A stretch of DNA of 64,000 nucleotides. It comes from Macrostomum hystrix. Its lineage: Eukaryota > Animalia > Platyhelminthes. A program made the translations under genes and the position numbers. Below are positions 31,945 through 42,758 of the stretch, in pieces. How positions within the stretch are numbered: the stretch's first letter is position 1; the number at the start of each line of letters is the position of its first letter. The notes beneath the pieces are model-generated. The model had not been told where the DNA came from and searched no databases. It worked only from the letters and a program-made list of their open reading frames with translations. The stretch lies in NCBI GenBank assembly GCA_950097015.1, contig CATNEN010000005.1, positions 4,030,001 to 4,094,000 on the forward strand, read 5' to 3'.

Positions 31945-34779
31945 ATGGCTAGCACCAAGCTAATCCGTTCCGCTCGTCTGGACACTCGTGCCGGCAAAGG
32001 CGCCGCTTCCGCGGCTGCCAATGATAAGCCGAGCGAGTTGGAGCTTCAACTAGCCCAGACCCTCATGGATCTGCAGCAGAATTCTGACCTGAAGAGCCAC
32101 CTAAAAGAATTGCACATCACCGGCGCCCGAGAGTTTGAAGTGCCCGGCGGCAAGAAGTGCATCGCCCTGATGGTGCCCGTGCCGCAGCTGCGCGCTTATC
32201 AGAAAATTCACGTTCGGCTAGTGCGCGAATTGGAGAAGAAATACTCCGGCAAGCACGTTGTGCTCATCGCCGAACGCCGCATCCTGCCAAAGGAGTCGCA
32301 TAAATCTCGCGGCGCCGGCGTCTTCAAGCAGAAGCGTCCGCGATCGCGCACTTTGACGGCCGTTCACGATGCTATGCTGGGCGATCTGGTCTTCCCGGCT
32401 GAGATTGTCGGCCGGCGCACTCGAGTCCGCGTTGATGGCAGCCGAACTATGAAGGTAGGTTCGCCTGCTTTCGCTTCCGTTCGTGAAAAAACTGCTCTTA
32501 CTCCACAATGTCAACCAGCTCTCACTCCACAATGTCAACCAGCTCTCACTCCACAATGTCAACCAGCTCTCACTCCACAATGTCAATCAGCTCTCACTCC
32601 ACAATGTCAACCAGCTCTCACTCCACAATGTCAATCAGCTCTCACTCCACAATGTCAATCAGCTCTCACTTCACAATGTCAACCAGCTCTCACTCCACAA
32701 TGTCAATCAGCTCTCACTCCACAATGTCAACCAGCTCTCACTCCACAATGTCAACCAGCTCTCACTCCACAATGTCAACCAGCTCTCACTCCACAATGTC
32801 AACCAGCTCTCACTCCACAATGTCAATCAGCTCTCACTCCACAATGTCAATCAGCTCTCACTTCACAATGTCAACCAGCTCTCACTCCACAATGTCAATC
32901 AGCTCTCACTCCACAATGTCAACCAGCTCTCACTCCACAATGTCAATCAGCTCTCACTCCACAATGTCAATCAGCTCTCACTTCACAATGTCAACCAGCT
33001 CTCACTCCACAATGTCAACCAGCTCTCACTTCACAATGTCAACCAGCTCTCACTTCACAATGTCAATCAGCTCTCACTTCACAATGTCAACCAGCTCTCA
33101 CTCCACAATGTCAACCAGCTCTCACTCCACAATGTCAATCAGCTATCACTCCACAATGTCAATCAGCTCTCACTCCACAATGTCAACCAGCTCTCACTCC
33201 ACAATGTCAACCAGCTCTCACTTCACAATGTCAACCAGCTCTCACTTCACAATGTCAACCAGCTCTCACTTCACAATGTCAACCAGCTCTCACTTCACAA
33301 TGTCAACCAGCTCTCACTCCACAATGTCAATCAGCTCTCACTCCACAATGTCAATCAGCTCTCACTTCACAATGTCAACCAGCTCTCACTCCACAATGTC
33401 AACCAGCTCTCACTTCACAATGTCAACCAGCTCTCACTTCACAATGTCAACCAGCTCTCACTCCACAATGTCAACCAGCTCTCACTCCACAATGTCAATC
33501 AGCTATCACTCCACAATGTCAATCAGCTCTCACTCCACAATGTCAACCAGCTCTCACTCCACAATGTCAACCAGCTCTCACTTCACAATGTCAACCAGCT
33601 CTCACTTCACAATGTCAACCAGCTCTCACTTCACAATGTCAACCAGCTCTCACTTCACAATGTCAACCAGCTCTCACTCCACAATGTCAACCAGCTCTCA
33701 CTCCACAATGTCAATCAGCTCTCACTCCACAATGTCAATCAGTTCTCACTTCACAATGTCAACCAGCTCTCACTCCACAATGTCAATCAGCTATCACTTC
33801 ACTATGTCAACCAGCTCTCACTCCACAATGTCAACCAGCTCCCACTCCACAATGTCAACCAGCTCTCACTCCACAATGTCAACCAGCTCTCACTCCACAA
33901 TGTCAACCAGCTCTCACTCCACAATGTCAACCAGCTCTCACTCCACATGTCAACCAGCTCTCACTCCACAATGTCAACCAGCTATCACTCCACAATGTCA
34001 ATCAGCTCTCACTCCACAATGTCAACCAGCTCTCACTCCACAATGTCAACCAGCTCTCACTTCACAATGTCAACCAGCTCTCACTTCACAATGTCAACCA
34101 GCTCTCACTTCACAATGTCAACCAGCTCTCACTTCACAATGTCAACCAGCTCTCACTCCACAATGTCAACCAGCTCTCACTCCACAATGTCAATCAGCTC
34201 TCACTCCACAATGTCAATCAGTTCTCACTTCACAATGTCAACCAGCTCTCACTCCACAATGTCAATCAGCTATCACTTCACTATGTCAACCAGCTCTCAC
34301 TCCACAATGTCAACCAGCTCCCACTCCACAATGTCAACCAGCTCTCACTCCACAATGTCAACCAGCTCTCACTCCACAATGTCAACCAGCTCTCACTCCA
34401 CATGTCAACCAGCTCTCACTCCACAATGTCAACCAGCTCTCACTCCACAATGTCAACCAGCTCTCACTCCACAATATGGTGAGAATCATATGATGAGATT
34501 GTCAGGGCAGGTGTACACACCTGTGTGAATGTGTGTTGAAGGAGTCAGCGGAATGGGCAGAATAGCCTCCTCGTTTGCAGCGAGTCTAGTGTCACCAAAT
34601 GCTTTTTCTAATTGTCTTAAAAGTACAATCACAATCACATAAATCTTCAATAATTTCAGGTTCACCTGGACAAAGCCAATCAAACATCGGTGGATCACAA
34701 GCTAGACACCTTCGCTTCTGTCTATCGTAGCCTTACTGGAAAGTCTGTCGTCTTTGAATTTCCCGACTACGCCCTGTGA
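31945..34779 (+). CDS. RPS7: 40S ribosomal protein S7 (2 coding exons)
   Basis: join(31945..32454,34660..34779). Motifs [66 protein letters not shown]. Confidence 0.97.
32490..34475. repeat. 24-bp minisatellite (about 80 copies) in the RPS7 intron
   Basis: Unit CTCTCACTCCACAATGTCAACCAG with two 23-bp variants. Confidence 0.97.
34490..34595 (+). mobile_element. SINE family A 3' fragment
   Basis: GTCAGGGCAGGTGTACACACCTGTG..GGAGTCAGCGGAATGGGCAGAATAGCCTCCTCG matches the family A core. Confidence 0.75.
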
Positions 34780-35034
34780 AGATAAGAGGCGTTTGGAATG
34801 GAATCCATTTTGAACCGGACTTTGATTGATGATTGATTGATAGTTTGCAAATTAAGTTTGAGGCCGGCATTGTTATACGAGTGTTTTAGATCAAAGCATA
34901 TGTGCGCTCAACACGTTGAATTATGAGAAAGTACATTGGATAGTTAATCTTCTGCTTTAAAAGGTTGCCTGTTTGCCTTTTGGATTGCTGGTGGAACTGG
35001 ACTTGTGCGTGTTTTCTTCAATTGTCTTTCGTTA

Positions 35035-35705
35035 TTTTTCAAAGCTTGTGTAATTACAGGTGCTTATAGACATTTTTCTAATACAGTTGATGATAGCAAC
35101 TTGTGATTACAGGTGATAACAGTAATTTATGTAATCACAGGTGATGAGTCAACTTTTGTAATTACAGGTGATGGTCGCTAATTTGCGTAATTACAGGTCA
35201 CGATAGCAACTCGTGTAATTACAGGTCACGATAGCAACTCGTGTAATTACAGGTCACGATAGCAACTCGTGTAATTACAGGTCACTATAGCAACTCGTGT
35301 AATTACATGTGATGATAGCAACTCGTGTAATTACATGTGATGATAGCAACTCGTGTAATTACAGGTCACGATAGCAACTCGTGTAATTACAGGTCACGAT
35401 AGCAACTCGCGTAATTACATGTGATGATAGCAACTCGTGTAATTACATGTGATGATAGCAACTCGTGTAATTACATGTGATGATAGCAACTCGTGTAATT
35501 ACAGGTCACGATAGCAACTCGTGCAATTACAGGTGATGATAGCAACTCGTGTAATTACATGTGATGATAGCAACTCGTGTAATTACATGTGATGATAGCA
35601 ACTCGTGCAATTACAGGCGATGATAGCAACTCGTGTAATTACATGTGATGATAGCAACTCGTGTAATTAAAGTTTATGATAGCAACTTGTGTAATTACAG
35701 GTGAT
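35035..35705. repeat. 28-bp minisatellite between RPS7 and the aquaporin
   Basis: Unit GTAATTACAGGTCACGATAGCAACTCGT. Confidence 0.95.
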
Positions 35706-35809
35706 AAATGACAACAAATGCGATAAATGATGTGTTAAATTACATAATATGTTTAAGTCTGGATTATCCGGATGTGAATTTCATCAGGCATTCGGATTGT
35801 ACTTTTCAG

Positions 35810-38800
35810 CTGCGCGTATTCTGTCAGCGATTATGGGATCTGGCATTTGGCCAGCCCGACCCGGAGCGACACGAGGTCATCCTGCTAGTGTCGCTGTTTT
35901 ACTATAGTTGCGCAATGCTGCTTGGCCGGTCCCTCAGGTGTTGCGTCAGGAGATTAATTGCACCGGCGTTTGGAAAATCGTTGGCCTCCTGCTTGTTGGA
36001 TTTGGTCACCACTTTTCAGGTTGGCTGGCGTGCGAGTTGAACGGATTATTGAAATAAAAAATCATCCGAGTTCCTCAATTTGTAATTCACCTGCGTACCT
36101 GAAGTTTAGAATCCGAGTACCTGAAGTTTAGAATCCGAGTACCTGAAGTTTAGAATCCGAGTACGTGAAGTTTTGAATCCGAGTACCTGAAGTTTAGAAT
36201 CCTACTAAGCTAGTACCTGAAGTTTAGAATCCTACTATGCTAGTACCTGAAGTTTAGAATCCTACTAAGCTAGTACCTGAAGTTTAGAATCCTATTAAGC
36301 TTAATAAAAATACGTGTATATGTGTCCCCATATTTTGCGTCTTTTGGTGAAGAAATGGTGAAAACCGGTTGAGCCGTTCGGGAGAAAATCAATTACAAGC
36401 AAGCAAGCAACCATTTCATTTTTAGTATATTAGAAGACTATGCTAGTACCTGAAGTTTAGAATCCTACTACTAGTACCTGAAGTTTAGAATCCTACTATA
36501 CTAGTACCTGAAGTTTAGAATCCTTTACTATACTAGTATCTGAAGTTTAGAATCCTACTACTAGTACCTGAAGTTTAGAATCCTACTATACTAGTACCTG
36601 AAGTTTAGAATCCTACTATACTAGTACCTGAAGTTTAGAATCCTACTATACTAGTACCTGAAGTTTAGAATCCTACTATACTAGTACCTGAAGTTTAGAA
36701 TCCTACTATACTAGTACCTGAAGTTTAGAATCCTACTACTAGTACCTGAAGTTTAGAATCCTACTACTAGTACCTGAAGTTTAGAATCCTACTATGCTAG
36801 TACCTGAAGTTTAGAATCCAACTACTAGTACCTGAAGTTTAGAATCCAACTACTAGTACCTGAAGTTTAGAATCCAACTACTAGTACCTGAAGTTTAGAA
36901 TCCAACTACTAGTACCTGAAGTTTAGAATCCTACTACTAGTACCTGAAGTTTAGAATCTTACTACTAGTACCTGAAGTTTAGAATCCAACTACTAGTACC
37001 TGAAGTTTAGAATCCTACTATACTAGTACCTGAAGTTTAGAATCCTACTACTAGTACCTGAAGTTTAGAATCCAACTACTAGTACCTGAAGTTTAGAATC
37101 TTACTACTAGTACCTGAAGTTTAGAATCCAACTACTAGTACCTGAAGTTTAGAATCCAACTACTAGTACCTGAAGTTTAGAATCCAACTACTAGTACCTG
37201 AAGTTTAGAATCCTACTACTAGTACCTGAAGTTTAGAATCCTACTACTAGTACCTGAAGTTTAGAATCCTACTATGCTAGTACCTGAAGTTTAGAATCCT
37301 ACTACTAGTACCTGAAGTTTAGAATCCAACTACTAGTACCTGAAGTTTAGAAACCTACTACTAGTACCTGAAGTTTAGAATCCTACTACTAGTACCTGAA
37401 GTTTAGAATCCTACTACTAGTACCTGAAGTTTAGAATCCAACTACTAGTACCTGAAGTTTAGAAACCTACTACTAGTACCTGAAGTTTAGATTGAGAGCA
37501 CCTGAAGTAATGATTTTCGAGCACCTGAAGTAATGATTTCGGAGCACCTGAAGGTTAGATTTTCATTACCTGAAGTTGAGAAGTGTAGAATCTCACTACC
37601 TAAAGTTTCAATATGCTCGAGCATACCTGAAGTTGAAATCTGCGAATACCTGTAGTTTCAGCATATTCACGAAAAGTACACAATATCATACAGGTTTGCG
37701 CCTGCAGCTTAGAAAACGGCGTAATACGCAAACACTACGGCATGCCGGCCTACCTGTTCACTCTGCTATTCCTCGGCGTCTGGCATTCGGCCACCCTAGG
37801 CGGCTGCAGCGGAAACCCATGCGGCGCCTGGCGCAGATTTGTTCTGGGCGAAGCTCGCCTGCCGAGCACTCTGGCAAGAATGTGTCTTCAGCTGCTAGCC
37901 GGAGCTGCCGCCCACAGATACGCCAGATCCTGCTGGTGGAGCTTCGGCTTGTCGTCGGAGCACGAATTGCGCTATCGAATCACCGGCTGTTCAACCGATT
38001 TAACAGTGCCTGTCAGTGCCGGATTCTCTATTGAAGCATTCGCCACTGGTCTGGACTTGCTGCTTGGCCTCTGCCTGTTTAGCAGCGGCCTGCGTTGGGA
38101 ACGATTCCAGCCGCTGATTAAAGTACTATTGAGCACACTACTCACCTACTGCGGTGAGTAGGGGTCTGTTCTGAGAAGGATTTATCTTGTGATTTTTTGC
38201 CTACAAACGATTATTTAATCTGCTGTTTCTGCTGATCCTATCCATTGTTAATGAAATACTGCGCATCACACTCAAGGGGAAAATGAATCACAGTTGAGCA
38301 GAGCTCTCGCAGGATTTAGGTTGAGCACAATGCCGCAGGTCTCGTCGGCCGCCCTCAACTGGATCTTGGTAGTTTGAGGGAATTGAGGTTTATTGTTAGG
38401 TTTCAAGGATAAACTTGGTCGCATCTCTCCCGTGTCTCATCTATTCCGTTTTTCATATTCCTACAGTAAATGCAGTCCGCTATTGTCTTTTAGGCTCTCT
38501 CCGTGGCCCGCGCGCTAATAATCTTGCCGACCCCTGTACTCAAGGGGCAGACTTATAAAAAGCCACCAGTAAAAAGTAGAGAAAAAACTAGGAAAAAAAC
38601 TGAAAAAAACCTCTCTGGTCTCGACAAAGTTGAATATCATCACGTGGTTTCTGTAATTAGAAACTGACGTCAGATAACCAAGGGGTCTGTTGCTAAAAAT
38701 AGAAACTGACGTCACGCATACGTAGGATATACGTGGGAGTAGAGAGGATCCTAAGGCAGGCCTGTTGCTAAACAACCGACTTGTTGCTAAAAATTGCTTG

Positions 38801-39261
38801 GATTAAATTGGAGCGCAACCGCAGTGAGAAGGCTTGTGTTACTGTCGTGAACATGCCATGTCTCTAAATCCCCGTCTCTCGCCTTATTCCCCTAAATTTC
38901 TCCCTCCCCCTGATCTCCAGGCCTGCACCTCACTGGAATGTACGTGAATCCGGCCAACGCCACTGCCCAGACGTTCGGCTGTGAAGGCTCCCAGCCGTGG
39001 GAGCACGTGACCGTCTATTGGCTGGGACCGCTGGCCGGAGTGACTGCGGCGGCCAAGCTGCACAGCCATTGGCTGGGCCTCGGGTGCGGCTCTGTGCGAT
39101 TGGACACAGTTGCCGCCGGGGTGGCCAATTCCGCTTGGCGATCGTCTGATAGGCTGGTCCGTCGCAGACTGTACAGCAGCGGAGTGACCGACGAACTGCA
39201 AGCTGACGTTGTAGTCGCTGATCAACCTGATGACAGACTCGAAGCGAAAAAACACGAATAA
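35810..39261 (+). CDS. AQP11: Unorthodox (AQP11/12-type) aquaporin, 3 exons; start codon uncertain
   Basis: join(35810..36019,37694..38153,38921..39261). TFQ|VCACSLE helix-1 motif, first loop GNPC, second loop TGMYVNPA, VYWLGP. No in-frame ATG between the TTTTCAG acceptor (35809) and TM1. An alternative in-frame ATG exists at 35708. Confidence 0.85.
36090..37560. repeat. 22/28/30-bp minisatellite in aquaporin intron 1
   Basis: Unit TAGTACCTGAAGTTTAGAATCCTACTAC and length variants; decays toward the acceptor. Confidence 0.95.
36300..36434 (-). mobile_element. Helitron-type 5' fragment interrupting the array
   Basis: Begins TCTAATATACTAAAAATG on the minus strand; near-identical to 30626-30766. 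Confidence 0.7.
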
Positions 39262-39349
39262 AATCTCTTGCAGAATTTAAATTTCAGTCTCATTTTAAAT
39301 TTCAATTTGGATTTACATGGCTTACTTTATGAATTATTAGAAATTCCAT

Positions 39350-41522: not shown

Positions 41523-42758
41523 TCACGAATCTGATGCGCTTGAAGCCGAGCGGGCTCGCTTAGGCGACGGCGAGGCGACGTCTGGATCGCGATCAACGTT
41601 GGCGTTGCCGTTGCCGTTAGTTGGTGGCGACGCCGAGCGCTTGCGACTCGCACTACGGCTACGGCTACGGTCCTTTGAAACGCTTCGACTACGGCTAAGG
41701 CCCTTCGAAACGCTTCGGCTACGGCTACGGTCCTTTGAAGCGCTGCGGCTGCGGCTACGACTATGGTCCTTTGTGACACTACGGCGACGATCTTTTGAAG
41801 CGCTGCGGCTACGGCTACGGCTACGGTCCTTTGAGACACTACGGCGACGATCTTTTGAAGCGCTGCGGCTACGGCTATGGTCCTTTGAGACACTACGGCG
41901 ACGATCTTTTGAAGCGCTGCGGCTACGGCTACGGCTATGGTCCTTTGAGACACTACGGCGGCGATCTTTTGAAGCGCTACGGCTACGGCGACGATCCTTT
42001 GAAGGGCTGCGGCTACGGCTGCGCTTGTTGTTTTTAGTTGGGCTTCGACTGCGGCTACGGCTAAGGCTACGGCTGCGTTTGCTGTCCTCTGAAACGCTGC
42101 GGCTACGTTTGCCAGTTTTAAGGCCATCTCTAGCTGGACTGCGGCTACGGCTACGGCTGCGGCTACGGCTGCGGCTACGGCTAACGCTACGGCCTCGCTT
42201 TCGACCACCGCGCCCACCGCGATCGCGGCTACGGCTGCGACTGCGGCTGCCGCCGGAGAGATCCTCTTTGAGTCGCAACCGCCTGCCGTGCCATTCATAG
42301 TCCTGATATTTATCCAGAGCTTTGCGCACATCCTCGCCAGTCTGAAATTCAACCACGCCCTCGCCGCGGCTCGGCCTGTGAGCGTCGGCGAATGTGACCT
42401 CGCCGGCGCGTCTGAATAGATCTTTGAGATCCTGCCAGCTGACGCCGGAGCTGAGGTTTTTCACAACCAGTCGGTGCCTTGTGCGAACCGGCGGAGCGAA
42501 TCGACGTTCCGAGCGAGCGCCCGGAGCTCCGGTCTTGGCAAACTCCAACGCCAGCCGTTCGCCGCACAGATCCCGACCGTCCAGATCCTTGACGGCGTCC
42601 TCGGCGTCTCTGGGATGTTCAAATTCAACGAAGCCGAAGCCGCTGCGCAGGAGGATTTCGCGAATTTCGCCGTAGCCGCGAAAGAAGCGCTCGACGTCTC
42701 GGCGGGTGGCCCGGTCCGACAGGCGACCCAGAAAAACTCTACGATAGCCGCGCGGCAT
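41523..42758 (-). CDS. SR splicing factor, SRSF4/5/6 (SRp55/B52) family, intronless CDS
   Basis: 411 aa. RRM1 (RVFLGRL..GFGFVEF..DAEDAV..LDG), RRM2 (HRLVVKNLSSGVSWQDLKD..GEVTFADAH), long RS domain. Confidence 0.95.
   Translation of the reverse strand: MPRGYRRVFLGRLSDRATRRDVERFFRGYGEIREILLRSGFGFVEFEHPRDAEDAVKDLDGRDLCGERLALEFAKTGAPGARSERRFAPPVRTRHRLVVKNLSSGVSWQDLKDLFRRAGEVTFADAHRPSRGEGVVEFQTGEDVRKALDKYQDYEWHGRRLRLKEDLSGGSRSRSRSRDRGGRGGRKRGRSVSRSRSRSRSRSRSRSPARDGLKTGKRSRSVSEDSKRSRSLSRSRSRSPTKNNKRSRSRSPSKDRRRSRSASKDRRRSVSKDHSRSRSRSASKDRRRSVSKDHSRSRSASKDRRRSVSKDRSRSRSRSASKDRRRSVTKDHSRSRSRSASKDRSRSRSVSKGLSRSRSVSKDRSRSRSASRKRSASPPTNGNGNANVDRDPDVASPSPKRARSASSASDS

What the first reader, a model, noticed from the sequence alone, without database searches (positions are those of the whole stretch)
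34779..36019. Aquaporin may have no start codon of its own: candidate spliced-leader-donated AUG in an RPS7-AQP operon
Seen: 1 kb after the RPS7 stop, on the same strand, an acceptor TTTTCAG (35809) is followed exactly in phase 0 by the aquaporin frame (CTG CGC GTA..). The first in-frame ATG downstream falls inside TM1 and no upstream donor exon is evident. Established: flatworm spliced leaders end in AUG, which can serve as initiator Met (shown in Schistosoma). Inference: a dicistronic RPS7-AQP transcript resolved by trans-splicing, with translation dependent on the SL AUG. Alternative: the in-frame ATG at 35708, at the array edge.
Basis: partly seen in the sequence, partly recalled or inferred. 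Interest (0 to 1): 0.78.

Follow-up and report, generated by a model that had tools for sequence, protein, structure and literature searches.

The report
Spliced leader supplies aquaporin-11 start codon
In this Macrostomum flatworm, RNA assemblies show the trans-spliced leader, which ends in AUG, joined exactly in frame to the first codon of an aquaporin-11-type gene that has no usable start codon in its mature mRNA; this is a new example of a flatworm habit known since 2006, and the proposed RPS7 operon is not shown.

Summary
TTTTCAG ends at 35809 and the aquaporin frame (CTG CGC GTA) starts at 35810 in phase 0. The next in-frame ATG is codon 36, inside the first hydrophobic helix. ATG 35708 is in frame 34 codons upstream.

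RNA settles the main question. In four runs (one study) a contig of about 1.1 kb carries ...TGCGAAGACTCAATTTATTGCAT(G) joined at 35809|35810. This matches the published 35-nt Macrostomum lignano spliced leader. The same contig is cis-spliced 36019>37694. No contig covers 35701-35808.

The M. lignano orthologue keeps the acceptor. It has in-frame stops 6-7 codons upstream and no ATG, and its 337-residue GenBank CDS starts at the CTG. Codons 1-35 differ between the species mainly at third positions (14 synonymous, 4 non-synonymous), so they are translated. The leader's AUG is therefore the initiator by inference; no protein data exist.

The gene is AQP11-type: NPC/NPA, both disulfide cysteines, and E 1.4e-9 to human AQP11.

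The operon is unproven. RPS7>AQP order and a repeat-adjusted spacer of about 360 nt are conserved and meet a published proximity rule, but no bridging RNA was seen.

The mechanism is known, and the scan already holds several such cases on other DNA of this genome.

The parts
31945..32454 (+). RPS7 (eS7) first coding exon, 170 codons from its own ATG; donor AAG|GTAGGT
   Evidence: 87% identical to M. lignano eS7
32455..34659 (+). RPS7 intron, almost filled by a 24-nt x 83 tandem array (32494-34475)
34660..34779 (+). RPS7 last exon, 39 codons plus TGA
   Evidence: Pfam PF01251 E 7.8e-11
34780..35809 (+). 1030-nt spacer. It holds the RPS7 3' UTR (end not mapped; AATTAA at 34850 is the only poly(A)-signal-like hexamer), then the 28-nt array 35048-35705, then the last 104 nt of the aquaporin outron.
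   Evidence: no RNA contig on 35701-35808
35708..35710 (+). In-frame ATG in the outron, 34 codons upstream of the acceptor. It is removed by trans-splicing and is not conserved.
   Evidence: no tblastn match of the 34 codons in M. lignano; 28% ungapped identity upstream
35803..35809 (+). SL trans-splice acceptor TTTTCAG; it fits the published [T/C]TNCAG motif
   Evidence: conserved in L001 and L002
35810..36019 (+). Aquaporin exon 1, 70 codons, phase 0 at both ends: N-terminal tail, an H0-like hydrophobic helix and the start of H1
36020..37693 (+). Intron 1, mostly 22-30-nt tandem arrays (36095-37576)
   Evidence: the junction 36019>37694 is read from the loose end
37694..38153 (+). Aquaporin exon 2 (153 codons + 1 nt), holding the NPC box and the loop-C cysteine
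38154..38920 (+). Intron 2 (GTGAGT...CCAG)
38921..39261 (+). Aquaporin exon 3, holding the NPA box and a Cys nine residues after it; stop TAA at 39259-39261; AATAAA at 39257 overlaps the stop

Best explanation
The gene at 35810-39261 is a three-exon aquaporin-11-type (unorthodox, NPC/NPA) aquaporin of a Macrostomum flatworm. Its primary transcript starts somewhere upstream of 35810, at a site that is not mapped. The spliceosome replaces that outron with the 35-nt spliced leader at the acceptor TTTTCAG|CTG (35809|35810). The leader ends in AUG, so the mature mRNA reads ...UUAUUGCAUG CUG CGC GUA... The leader's AUG is the first AUG of the mRNA and is in frame with the aquaporin, giving an N-terminus M-LRVFCQRLWDLAFGQPDPERHEV followed by the first hydrophobic helix. 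Shown here: the SL junction, the cis-splice junction to exon 2, conservation of the acceptor and phase, absence of any genomic ATG in the M. lignano orthologue, and purifying selection on the 35 codons that only the SL AUG can open. Inferred: that ribosomes actually start at the SL AUG. This is established for Schistosoma mansoni (Cheng et al. 2006) but not for Macrostomum. Whether the outron starts at a promoter in the spacer or continues from RPS7 is open.
For:: in 4 of 4 runs one contig (710-1095 nt, 0 mismatches) aligns to 35809-36022. Its loose letters before 35809 are TGCGAAGACTCAATTTATTGCAT, and behind 36022 they are the exon-2 sequence. Depth is 0 on 35701-35798.
the published M. lignano SL is CGGTCTCTTACTGCGAAGACTCAATTTATTGCATG, and the SL acceptor motif is [T/C]TNCAG.
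in both M. lignano loci the gene begins at the base after AATTTTCAG. In-frame stops lie 7 and 6 codons upstream with no ATG between. The 337-residue GenBank CDS equals exactly the codons from that CTG to the stop.
codons 1-35 differ from M. lignano at codon positions [3,2,16], with 14 synonymous and 4 non-synonymous codon changes and no indels. The 105 nt upstream are 28% identical.
in SL + exon 1 the AUGs are the SL AUG (frame 0), an out-of-frame AUG 26 nt further on, and then codon 36 inside the hydrophobic helix.
in human AQP11, deleting helix H0 or residues 1-8 markedly lowers expression.
all reported flatworm SLs end in AUG, and more than 40 S. mansoni cDNAs need it.
Against: There are no protein or ribosome-profiling data for this gene or species. 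The RNA evidence is assembled contigs from one study, so rare non-trans-spliced isoforms that keep ATG 35708 cannot be excluded. The context of the SL AUG (U at -3, C at +4) is poor by vertebrate Kozak rules (my own knowledge). The junction is formally ambiguous by one base, because the G at 35809 could be the SL's G.
Confidence: 0.85

Rival explanations
1. Operon reading (compatible with the SL-AUG start). RPS7 and the aquaporin are co-transcribed from the RPS7 promoter. The precursor is resolved by polyadenylation of RPS7 and SL trans-splicing at 35810, and the 1-kb spacer is an intercistronic region swollen by a minisatellite.
For: The two genes are on the same strand and the downstream gene is SL trans-spliced. 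The stop-to-acceptor distance is 1030 nt, or 372 nt after removing the 658-nt array. The two M. lignano loci give 353 and 366 nt although their arrays are unrelated in sequence. Gene order is conserved between the species. PMC8629364 classes any pair as an operon when the repeat-adjusted distance is under 1 kb and the downstream gene is trans-spliced, and it notes that repeats inflate operon spacers.
Against: No RNA bridges the genes. None of four assemblies covers 35701-35808, although one keeps a piece of intron 1. The published rule is statistical only. The operon mode is about 100 bp, and for pairs whose first gene is not trans-spliced the distance distribution is unimodal. Whether RPS7 is trans-spliced is unknown. 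Neighbouring genes are expected to stay neighbours between congeners anyway. A ribosomal-protein gene and an ER aquaporin probably differ greatly in mRNA level (my own expectation, not measured).
Confidence: 0.35
2. The aquaporin uses its own genomic start, ATG 35708, on transcripts that are not trans-spliced, giving a protein 34 residues longer (MTTNAINDV...).
For: The ATG is in frame and the 34 codons are open. Contigs cannot prove that minor isoforms are absent.
Against: No contig covers 35701-35808 in any of the four runs, while the SL form is assembled in all four. The 34 codons have no counterpart in M. lignano, where stops lie 6-7 codons upstream and L002 carries a 13-nt indel relative to L001. 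The ATG directly follows a stop at the edge of a minisatellite. The extra residues find nothing meaningful among solved structures (E > 0.5).
Confidence: 0.04
3. The SL AUG is skipped and translation starts at the internal Met (exon-1 codon 36, 35915-35917), making codons 1-35 a 5' UTR.
For: Met36 is conserved in M. lignano. The SL AUG has a weak context and lies only 32 nt from the cap.
Against: Codons 1-35 evolve as coding sequence: 16 of 21 differences are at third positions, with 14 synonymous and 4 non-synonymous codon changes and no indels. An out-of-frame AUG lies between the SL AUG and Met36. Starting at Met36 would cut the H0-like helix after 13 of its 17 residues, and loss of H0 lowers human AQP11 expression.
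Confidence: 0.07

Closest known systems
[quoted passage not shown]
   Same: The SL ends in AUG and is trans-spliced in frame onto an ORF that lacks its own start in the mature mRNA.
   Different: The species and gene differ, and translation from the SL AUG is not demonstrated here. The comparative evidence used here (orthologue with upstream stops, codon-position bias) is new for this gene only.
Macrostomum lignano orthologue on NIVC01000029.1 and NIVC01000843.1 (Mlig_3_7), a 337-residue CDS downstream of eS7
   Same: It has the same three exons, the same TTTTCAG|CTGCGC acceptor and phase, and the same upstream neighbour. Amino-acid identity is 83-86% in exons 1-2.
   Different: It has no in-frame upstream ATG at all. 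Its spacer and intron arrays have unrelated units. Its RPS7 is intronless, whereas the window's RPS7 has a 2.2-kb intron.
Other SL-AUG genes noted by this scan in the same genome (NF-YB, CHMP6, ZC3H13, cardiolipin synthase, TOP3A, thimet-oligopeptidase-like)
   Same: Same mechanism and same kind of RNA evidence, according to those notes.
   Different: They lie on other DNA, and I did not re-test them. Here an in-frame genomic ATG does exist in the outron, so the case needed the orthologue to dismiss it.
Human aquaporin-11 (PDB 9vxw; cryo-EM, PMC12857728)
   Same: NPC first box, NPA second box, both cysteines of the Cys155-Cys227 disulfide, and a hydrophobic N-terminal segment ahead of H1. The exon 1/2 boundary falls at the same ...TFQ| position. 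Exon 2 matches at E 1.4e-9.
   Different: The N-terminal tail is about 6 residues longer, the H0-H1 linker is about 10 residues longer and the C-terminal tail is long. The Pfam MIP score is below the gathering threshold. Function and localisation are untested.
SL-resolved operons of M. lignano and C. elegans (PMC8629364)
   Same: Same-strand neighbours, a trans-spliced downstream gene and a repeat-adjusted spacer under 1 kb.
   Different: No polycistronic precursor is seen. The spacer is longer than the modal distance of about 100 bp.

Membership tests
SL-donated initiator AUG (flatworm type) | A spliced leader ending in AUG is joined to the 5' end of the mRNA | tested here: met
   4 of 4 runs carry ...TGCGAAGACTCAATTTATTGCAT(G) joined at 35809|35810, identical to the 3' 23-24 nt of the published SL.
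SL-donated initiator AUG (flatworm type) | The SL AUG is in frame with the conserved ORF, with no stop between | tested here: met
   AUG|CTG CGC GTA is in phase 0 and open to the donor at 36019. The same holds in M. lignano.
SL-donated initiator AUG (flatworm type) | The mature mRNA has no other AUG able to open the conserved N-terminal coding sequence | tested here: met
   the next AUG is out of frame and the next in-frame one is codon 36; codons 1-35 are under purifying selection. The M. lignano loci have upstream stops and no ATG.
SL-donated initiator AUG (flatworm type) | Translation demonstrably starts at the SL AUG | not testable with these tools
   This needs N-terminal proteomics, ribosome profiling or a reporter.
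SL-resolved operon | Same strand, downstream gene trans-spliced, short (repeat-adjusted under 1 kb) intercistronic distance | tested here: met
   1030 nt raw and 372 nt repeat-adjusted; 353 and 366 nt in M. lignano.
SL-resolved operon | A polycistronic precursor RNA spans both genes | tested here: inconclusive
   One search covered only 35701-36095. No contig lies on 35701-35808, but contigs show presence, not absence.
SL-resolved operon | No independent transcription start for the downstream gene | not testable with these tools
   No 5'-end (CAGE/RAMPAGE) data were available.
AQP11-type unorthodox aquaporin | The first NPA box is replaced by NPC | tested here: met
   GCSGNPCGAW in exon 2 aligns with human SSNPCGV.
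AQP11-type unorthodox aquaporin | The second NPA box is present, followed by the conserved Cys (human Cys227); the loop-C Cys (Cys155) is also present | tested here: met
   Exon 3 reads YVNPANATAQTFGC, with the Cys 9 residues after NPA. ITGCST aligns with human FACKN at Cys155. The disulfide is described in PMC12857728.
AQP11-type unorthodox aquaporin | Significant sequence similarity to AQP11 / MIP family | tested here: met
   Exon 2 against PDB 9vxw (AQP11) gives E 1.4e-9. Exon 3 against AQP2 gives E 3e-4. The protein atlas gives aquaporin clusters at 0.87-0.89. Pfam MIP appears only for exon 3 and below the cut-off (17.5 against 25 bits).
AQP11-type unorthodox aquaporin | An extra N-terminal transmembrane helix H0 ahead of H1 | tested here: inconclusive
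   Hydropathy shows a 17-residue hydrophobic segment (exon-1 residues 23-39) ahead of the H1-equivalent ...LLDLVTTFQ. No structure was predicted.

The most novel reading that the evidence does not exclude
RPS7 and the AQP11-type gene form a conserved Macrostomum operon whose intercistronic region tolerates repeated invasion by unrelated minisatellites. The aquaporin would then be doubly dependent on trans-splicing, both to be cut out of the precursor and to receive its only start codon. In this species alone, failure to trans-splice would expose a lineage-specific ATG (35708) and give an N-terminally extended isoform.
Probability: 0.25. Interest if true: 0.4.

Novelty: new member of a known kind. 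Interest (0 to 1): 0.25.

Why it matters
The main value is for annotation. Pipelines that trim the leader together with its ATG leave such genes as 5'-partial CDSs, as in the M. lignano GenBank record. Otherwise they pick a wrong ATG, which here would be either the outron ATG 35708 or Met36. For an AQP11-type channel the N-terminus matters, because in human AQP11 the luminal N-tail and helix H0 are needed for normal expression. The locus is also a clean, conserved test case for asking whether Macrostomum "operons" defined by proximity, with satellite-filled spacers, are really co-transcribed. It does not reveal a new mechanism.

Tried and rejected
- A word search with exon 1 plus the 34 upstream codons found no candidates.
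- A word search with exon 2 found only one M. lignano UniRef model, P0001, 198 aa. It is misnamed Cas1_AcylT and uses an internal donor. Its locus is not on record.
- An exact look-up of the genomic ORF 35708-36037 found nothing.
- I considered using M. lignano locus-tag numbering (Mlig001712g1...) as evidence for a shared transcriptional unit. I rejected this because the gN numbers enumerate near-identical copies: Mlig026494 g1, g3 and g4 are all eS7 (naming rule).
- The operon paper has no supplement held as text, and no paper mentions Mlig001712.
- There is no SL RNA gene in the window.
- A 9-nt SL-like TATTGCATG lies just upstream of the intronless M. lignano RPS7. I considered it a sign of a retrocopy, but the alignment with the window shows homologous flanks and only partial similarity, so it is probably chance.
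- Pfam alone does not call the aquaporin.
- Read laying was deliberately limited to the repeat-free 395 nt, so the array and the RPS7 3' end were not examined.
Full report
**What is in the sequence**

The + strand carries an eS7 (RPS7) gene with two coding exons. The first is 31945-32454, with its own ATG. The second is 34660-34779 and ends in TGA (Pfam Ribosomal_S7e on the last exon, E 7.8e-11). The two exons are separated by an intron almost filled by a 24-nt x 83 array.

The heptamer TTTTCAG ends at 35809, which is 1030 nt after the RPS7 stop. From 35810 an open frame, CTG CGC GTA..., runs for 70 codons to a donor CAG|GTTGG at 36019|36020. The gene continues with exon 2 (37694-38153) and exon 3 (38921-39261, stop TAA).

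The frame is also open upstream of the acceptor for 34 codons, back to ATG 35708. That ATG directly follows a TAA at the edge of a 28-nt minisatellite at 35048-35705. The next in-frame ATG downstream is exon-1 codon 36, inside the hydrophobic 17-mer VILLVSLFYYSCAMLLG.

**What the protein is**

Pfam alone is not decisive. It gives nothing for exons 1 and 2, and MIP at 17.5 bits (cut-off 25) for exon 3. Three other lines of evidence settle the family.
- Exon 2 matches the solved human aquaporin-11 (PDB 9vxw) at E 1.4e-9. GNPCG aligns on the AQP11 NPC box, and ITGCST aligns on human Cys155.
- Exon 3 matches aquaporin C-terminal halves (AQP2, E 3e-4). It reads NPANATAQTFGC, with a Cys nine residues after NPA, the position of human Cys227. 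Cys227 forms a disulfide with Cys155 (PMC12857728).
- The protein atlas also returns aquaporin clusters.

The exon 1/2 boundary (...TTFQ|VCAC) falls at the position of human ...ATFQ|LCCC. Human AQP11 has an extra N-terminal helix H0 with a luminal N-terminus, and deleting H0 or residues 1-8 markedly lowers expression. The hydrophobic segment that holds Met36 is thus best read as the H0 equivalent, not canonical TM1. This is predicted from hydropathy only.

**The RNA test**

The look-up of sequencing runs returned four runs of one 2020 study, each holding 36-38% of the sampled words of 35701-39300. That share is roughly the exonic fraction.

I laid their contigs on the repeat-free stretch 35701-36095. 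In every run one contig (710 nt, and 1065-1095 nt) aligns without mismatch to 35809-36022.
- Before 35809 the contig continues with TGCGAAGACTCAATTTATTGCAT. In X1 an Illumina adapter is followed by CTCAATTTATTGCAT.
- Behind 36022 it continues with TGCGCCTGCAGC..., which is exon 2 from 37697. The three bases GTT are shared by both sides, so the junction is 36019>37694.

The published 35-nt M. lignano leader is CGGTCTCTTACTGCGAAGACTCAATTTATTGCATG, and its acceptor motif is [T/C]TNCAG (PMC8629364). The loose letters plus the ambiguous G at 35809 are the leader's last 23-24 nt, and TTTCAG fits the motif. The mature mRNA therefore reads ...UUGCAUG|CUGCGCGUA, with the leader AUG in phase with the aquaporin.

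No contig in any run covers 35701-35808, although X1 keeps a low-depth piece of intron 1. Contigs show presence, not absence, so a minor unspliced form cannot be excluded.

**Comparative test**

The window's eS7 is only 87% identical to the best M. lignano protein. The genome is therefore a Macrostomum other than the Mlig_3_7 assembly. SLs are reported to be highly conserved within the genus (PMC10468722).

The two M. lignano loci that encode that eS7 (L001, L002) carry a 337-residue gene on the same strand, 957 and 1160 nt downstream. Its three exons match the window's at 86, 83 and 69% amino-acid identity. The annotated gene starts at the first base after AATTTTCAG. The exons add up to exactly 338 codons including the stop, so the GenBank CDS begins at the CTG and has no Met.

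Upstream of that acceptor M. lignano has in-frame stops 7 and 6 codons away, with no ATG between. L002 has a 13-nt insertion relative to L001. The window's 34 upstream codons have no tblastn counterpart, and the 105 nt upstream are 28% identical.

By contrast, the 35 codons between the acceptor and Met36 differ at codon positions 1/2/3 by 3/2/16, with 14 synonymous and 4 non-synonymous codon changes and no indels. They are translated sequence, and in M. lignano only the leader's AUG can open them. In the window's mature mRNA the next AUG after the leader's is out of frame, so reaching Met36 would need two AUGs to be skipped.

**Mechanism**

- Shown: SL trans-splicing at 35809|35810, an in-frame SL AUG, and conservation of both.
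- Inferred: initiation at that AUG. This is established for Schistosoma mansoni, where 28% of SL mRNAs are in frame and more than 40 cDNAs need the SL AUG (Cheng et al. 2006, as summarised in PMC9851317). All reported flatworm SLs end in ATG (PMC12582326).

I put the SL-AUG start at about 0.85, the ATG-35708 start at about 0.04 and the Met36 start at about 0.07.

**The operon claim**

For:
- The genes are on the same strand and the downstream gene is trans-spliced.
- The spacer is 372 nt once the 658-nt array is removed. It is 353 and 366 nt in the two M. lignano loci, whose arrays have unrelated units.
- PMC8629364 classes such pairs (repeat-adjusted distance under 1 kb) as operons, and explicitly says that repeats inflate operon spacers.

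Against:
- That rule is statistical, with a mode near 100 bp. It is weaker when the first gene is not trans-spliced, and whether RPS7 is trans-spliced is unknown.
- About 60% of SL genes are outside operons.
- No RNA contig touches the 108 nt upstream of the acceptor.

I could not lay reads on the array or on the RPS7 3' end. Locus-tag numbering, supplements and text searches gave nothing usable. I leave co-transcription at about 0.35.

**Novelty**

The mechanism has been known since 2006. For Macrostomum, PMC10468722 already remarks that the SL probably contains the final ATG as a start codon. This scan's own notes list several RNA-supported cases in the same genome on other DNA: NF-YB, CHMP6, ZC3H13, cardiolipin synthase, TOP3A and a thimet-oligopeptidase-like gene. 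I did not re-test them.

This locus is a further member of that kind. Its particular features are an in-frame decoy ATG in the outron and an orthologue that removes the ambiguity.

All protein evidence is exon by exon.

Noticed in passing
window 35048-35705: Thirteen units of the 28-nt spacer array carry TTACAG, which fits the published SL-acceptor motif [T/C]TNCAG. With the real acceptor that makes 14 matches in 762 nt, against about 1.7 expected at the window's average density. Each is followed by GT. None is seen in use: the last one, at 35695-35700, would give contigs over 35701-35808, and there are none. The scan has a similar note elsewhere (s1-268165).
   Followed up: partly
window 32494-34475, 35048-35705, 36095-37576; L001 10892-11495, 11913-12271, 13141-13984: The RPS7 intron, the spacer and aquaporin intron 1 are each filled by a minisatellite. 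The orthologous spacer and introns of M. lignano also hold arrays, but with unrelated units. The non-repeat spacer length is nearly constant (353-372 nt), so arrays turn over at fixed genomic slots.
   Followed up: partly
L001 10001-10639 and L002 10001-10639, against window 31945-34779: The M. lignano eS7 linked to the aquaporin is intronless (212 codons in 639 nt), whereas the window's orthologue has a 2.2-kb intron. A second M. lignano eS7 family (L003, 79% identical) has an intron and no aquaporin within 10 kb downstream.
   Followed up: partly
L001 9991-9999: The genomic sequence TATTGCATG, identical to the last 9 nt of the spliced leader, ends one base before the annotated start of the intronless M. 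lignano RPS7. Alignment with the window suggests homologous sequence and a chance resemblance rather than an SL relic.
   Followed up: partly
P0001 (UniRef A0A1I8H3N3, M. lignano): The only database protein found for the aquaporin is a 198-aa model named 'Cas1_AcylT domain-containing protein'. It starts at LRIF... (no Met), skips 25 residues through an internal GT in exon 1 and lacks exon 3. The name and the model look wrong.
   Followed up: partly
window 39257-39262: An AATAAA overlaps the aquaporin stop codon (GAA TAA AA). The RNA contigs extend about 57 nt beyond the stop.
   Followed up: no
window 41560-42300, minus-strand sense: A long run of CGGCTACGG-type repeats (periods 6, 30, 60 and 114) looks like an RS-rich coding repeat on the opposite strand.
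   Followed up: no
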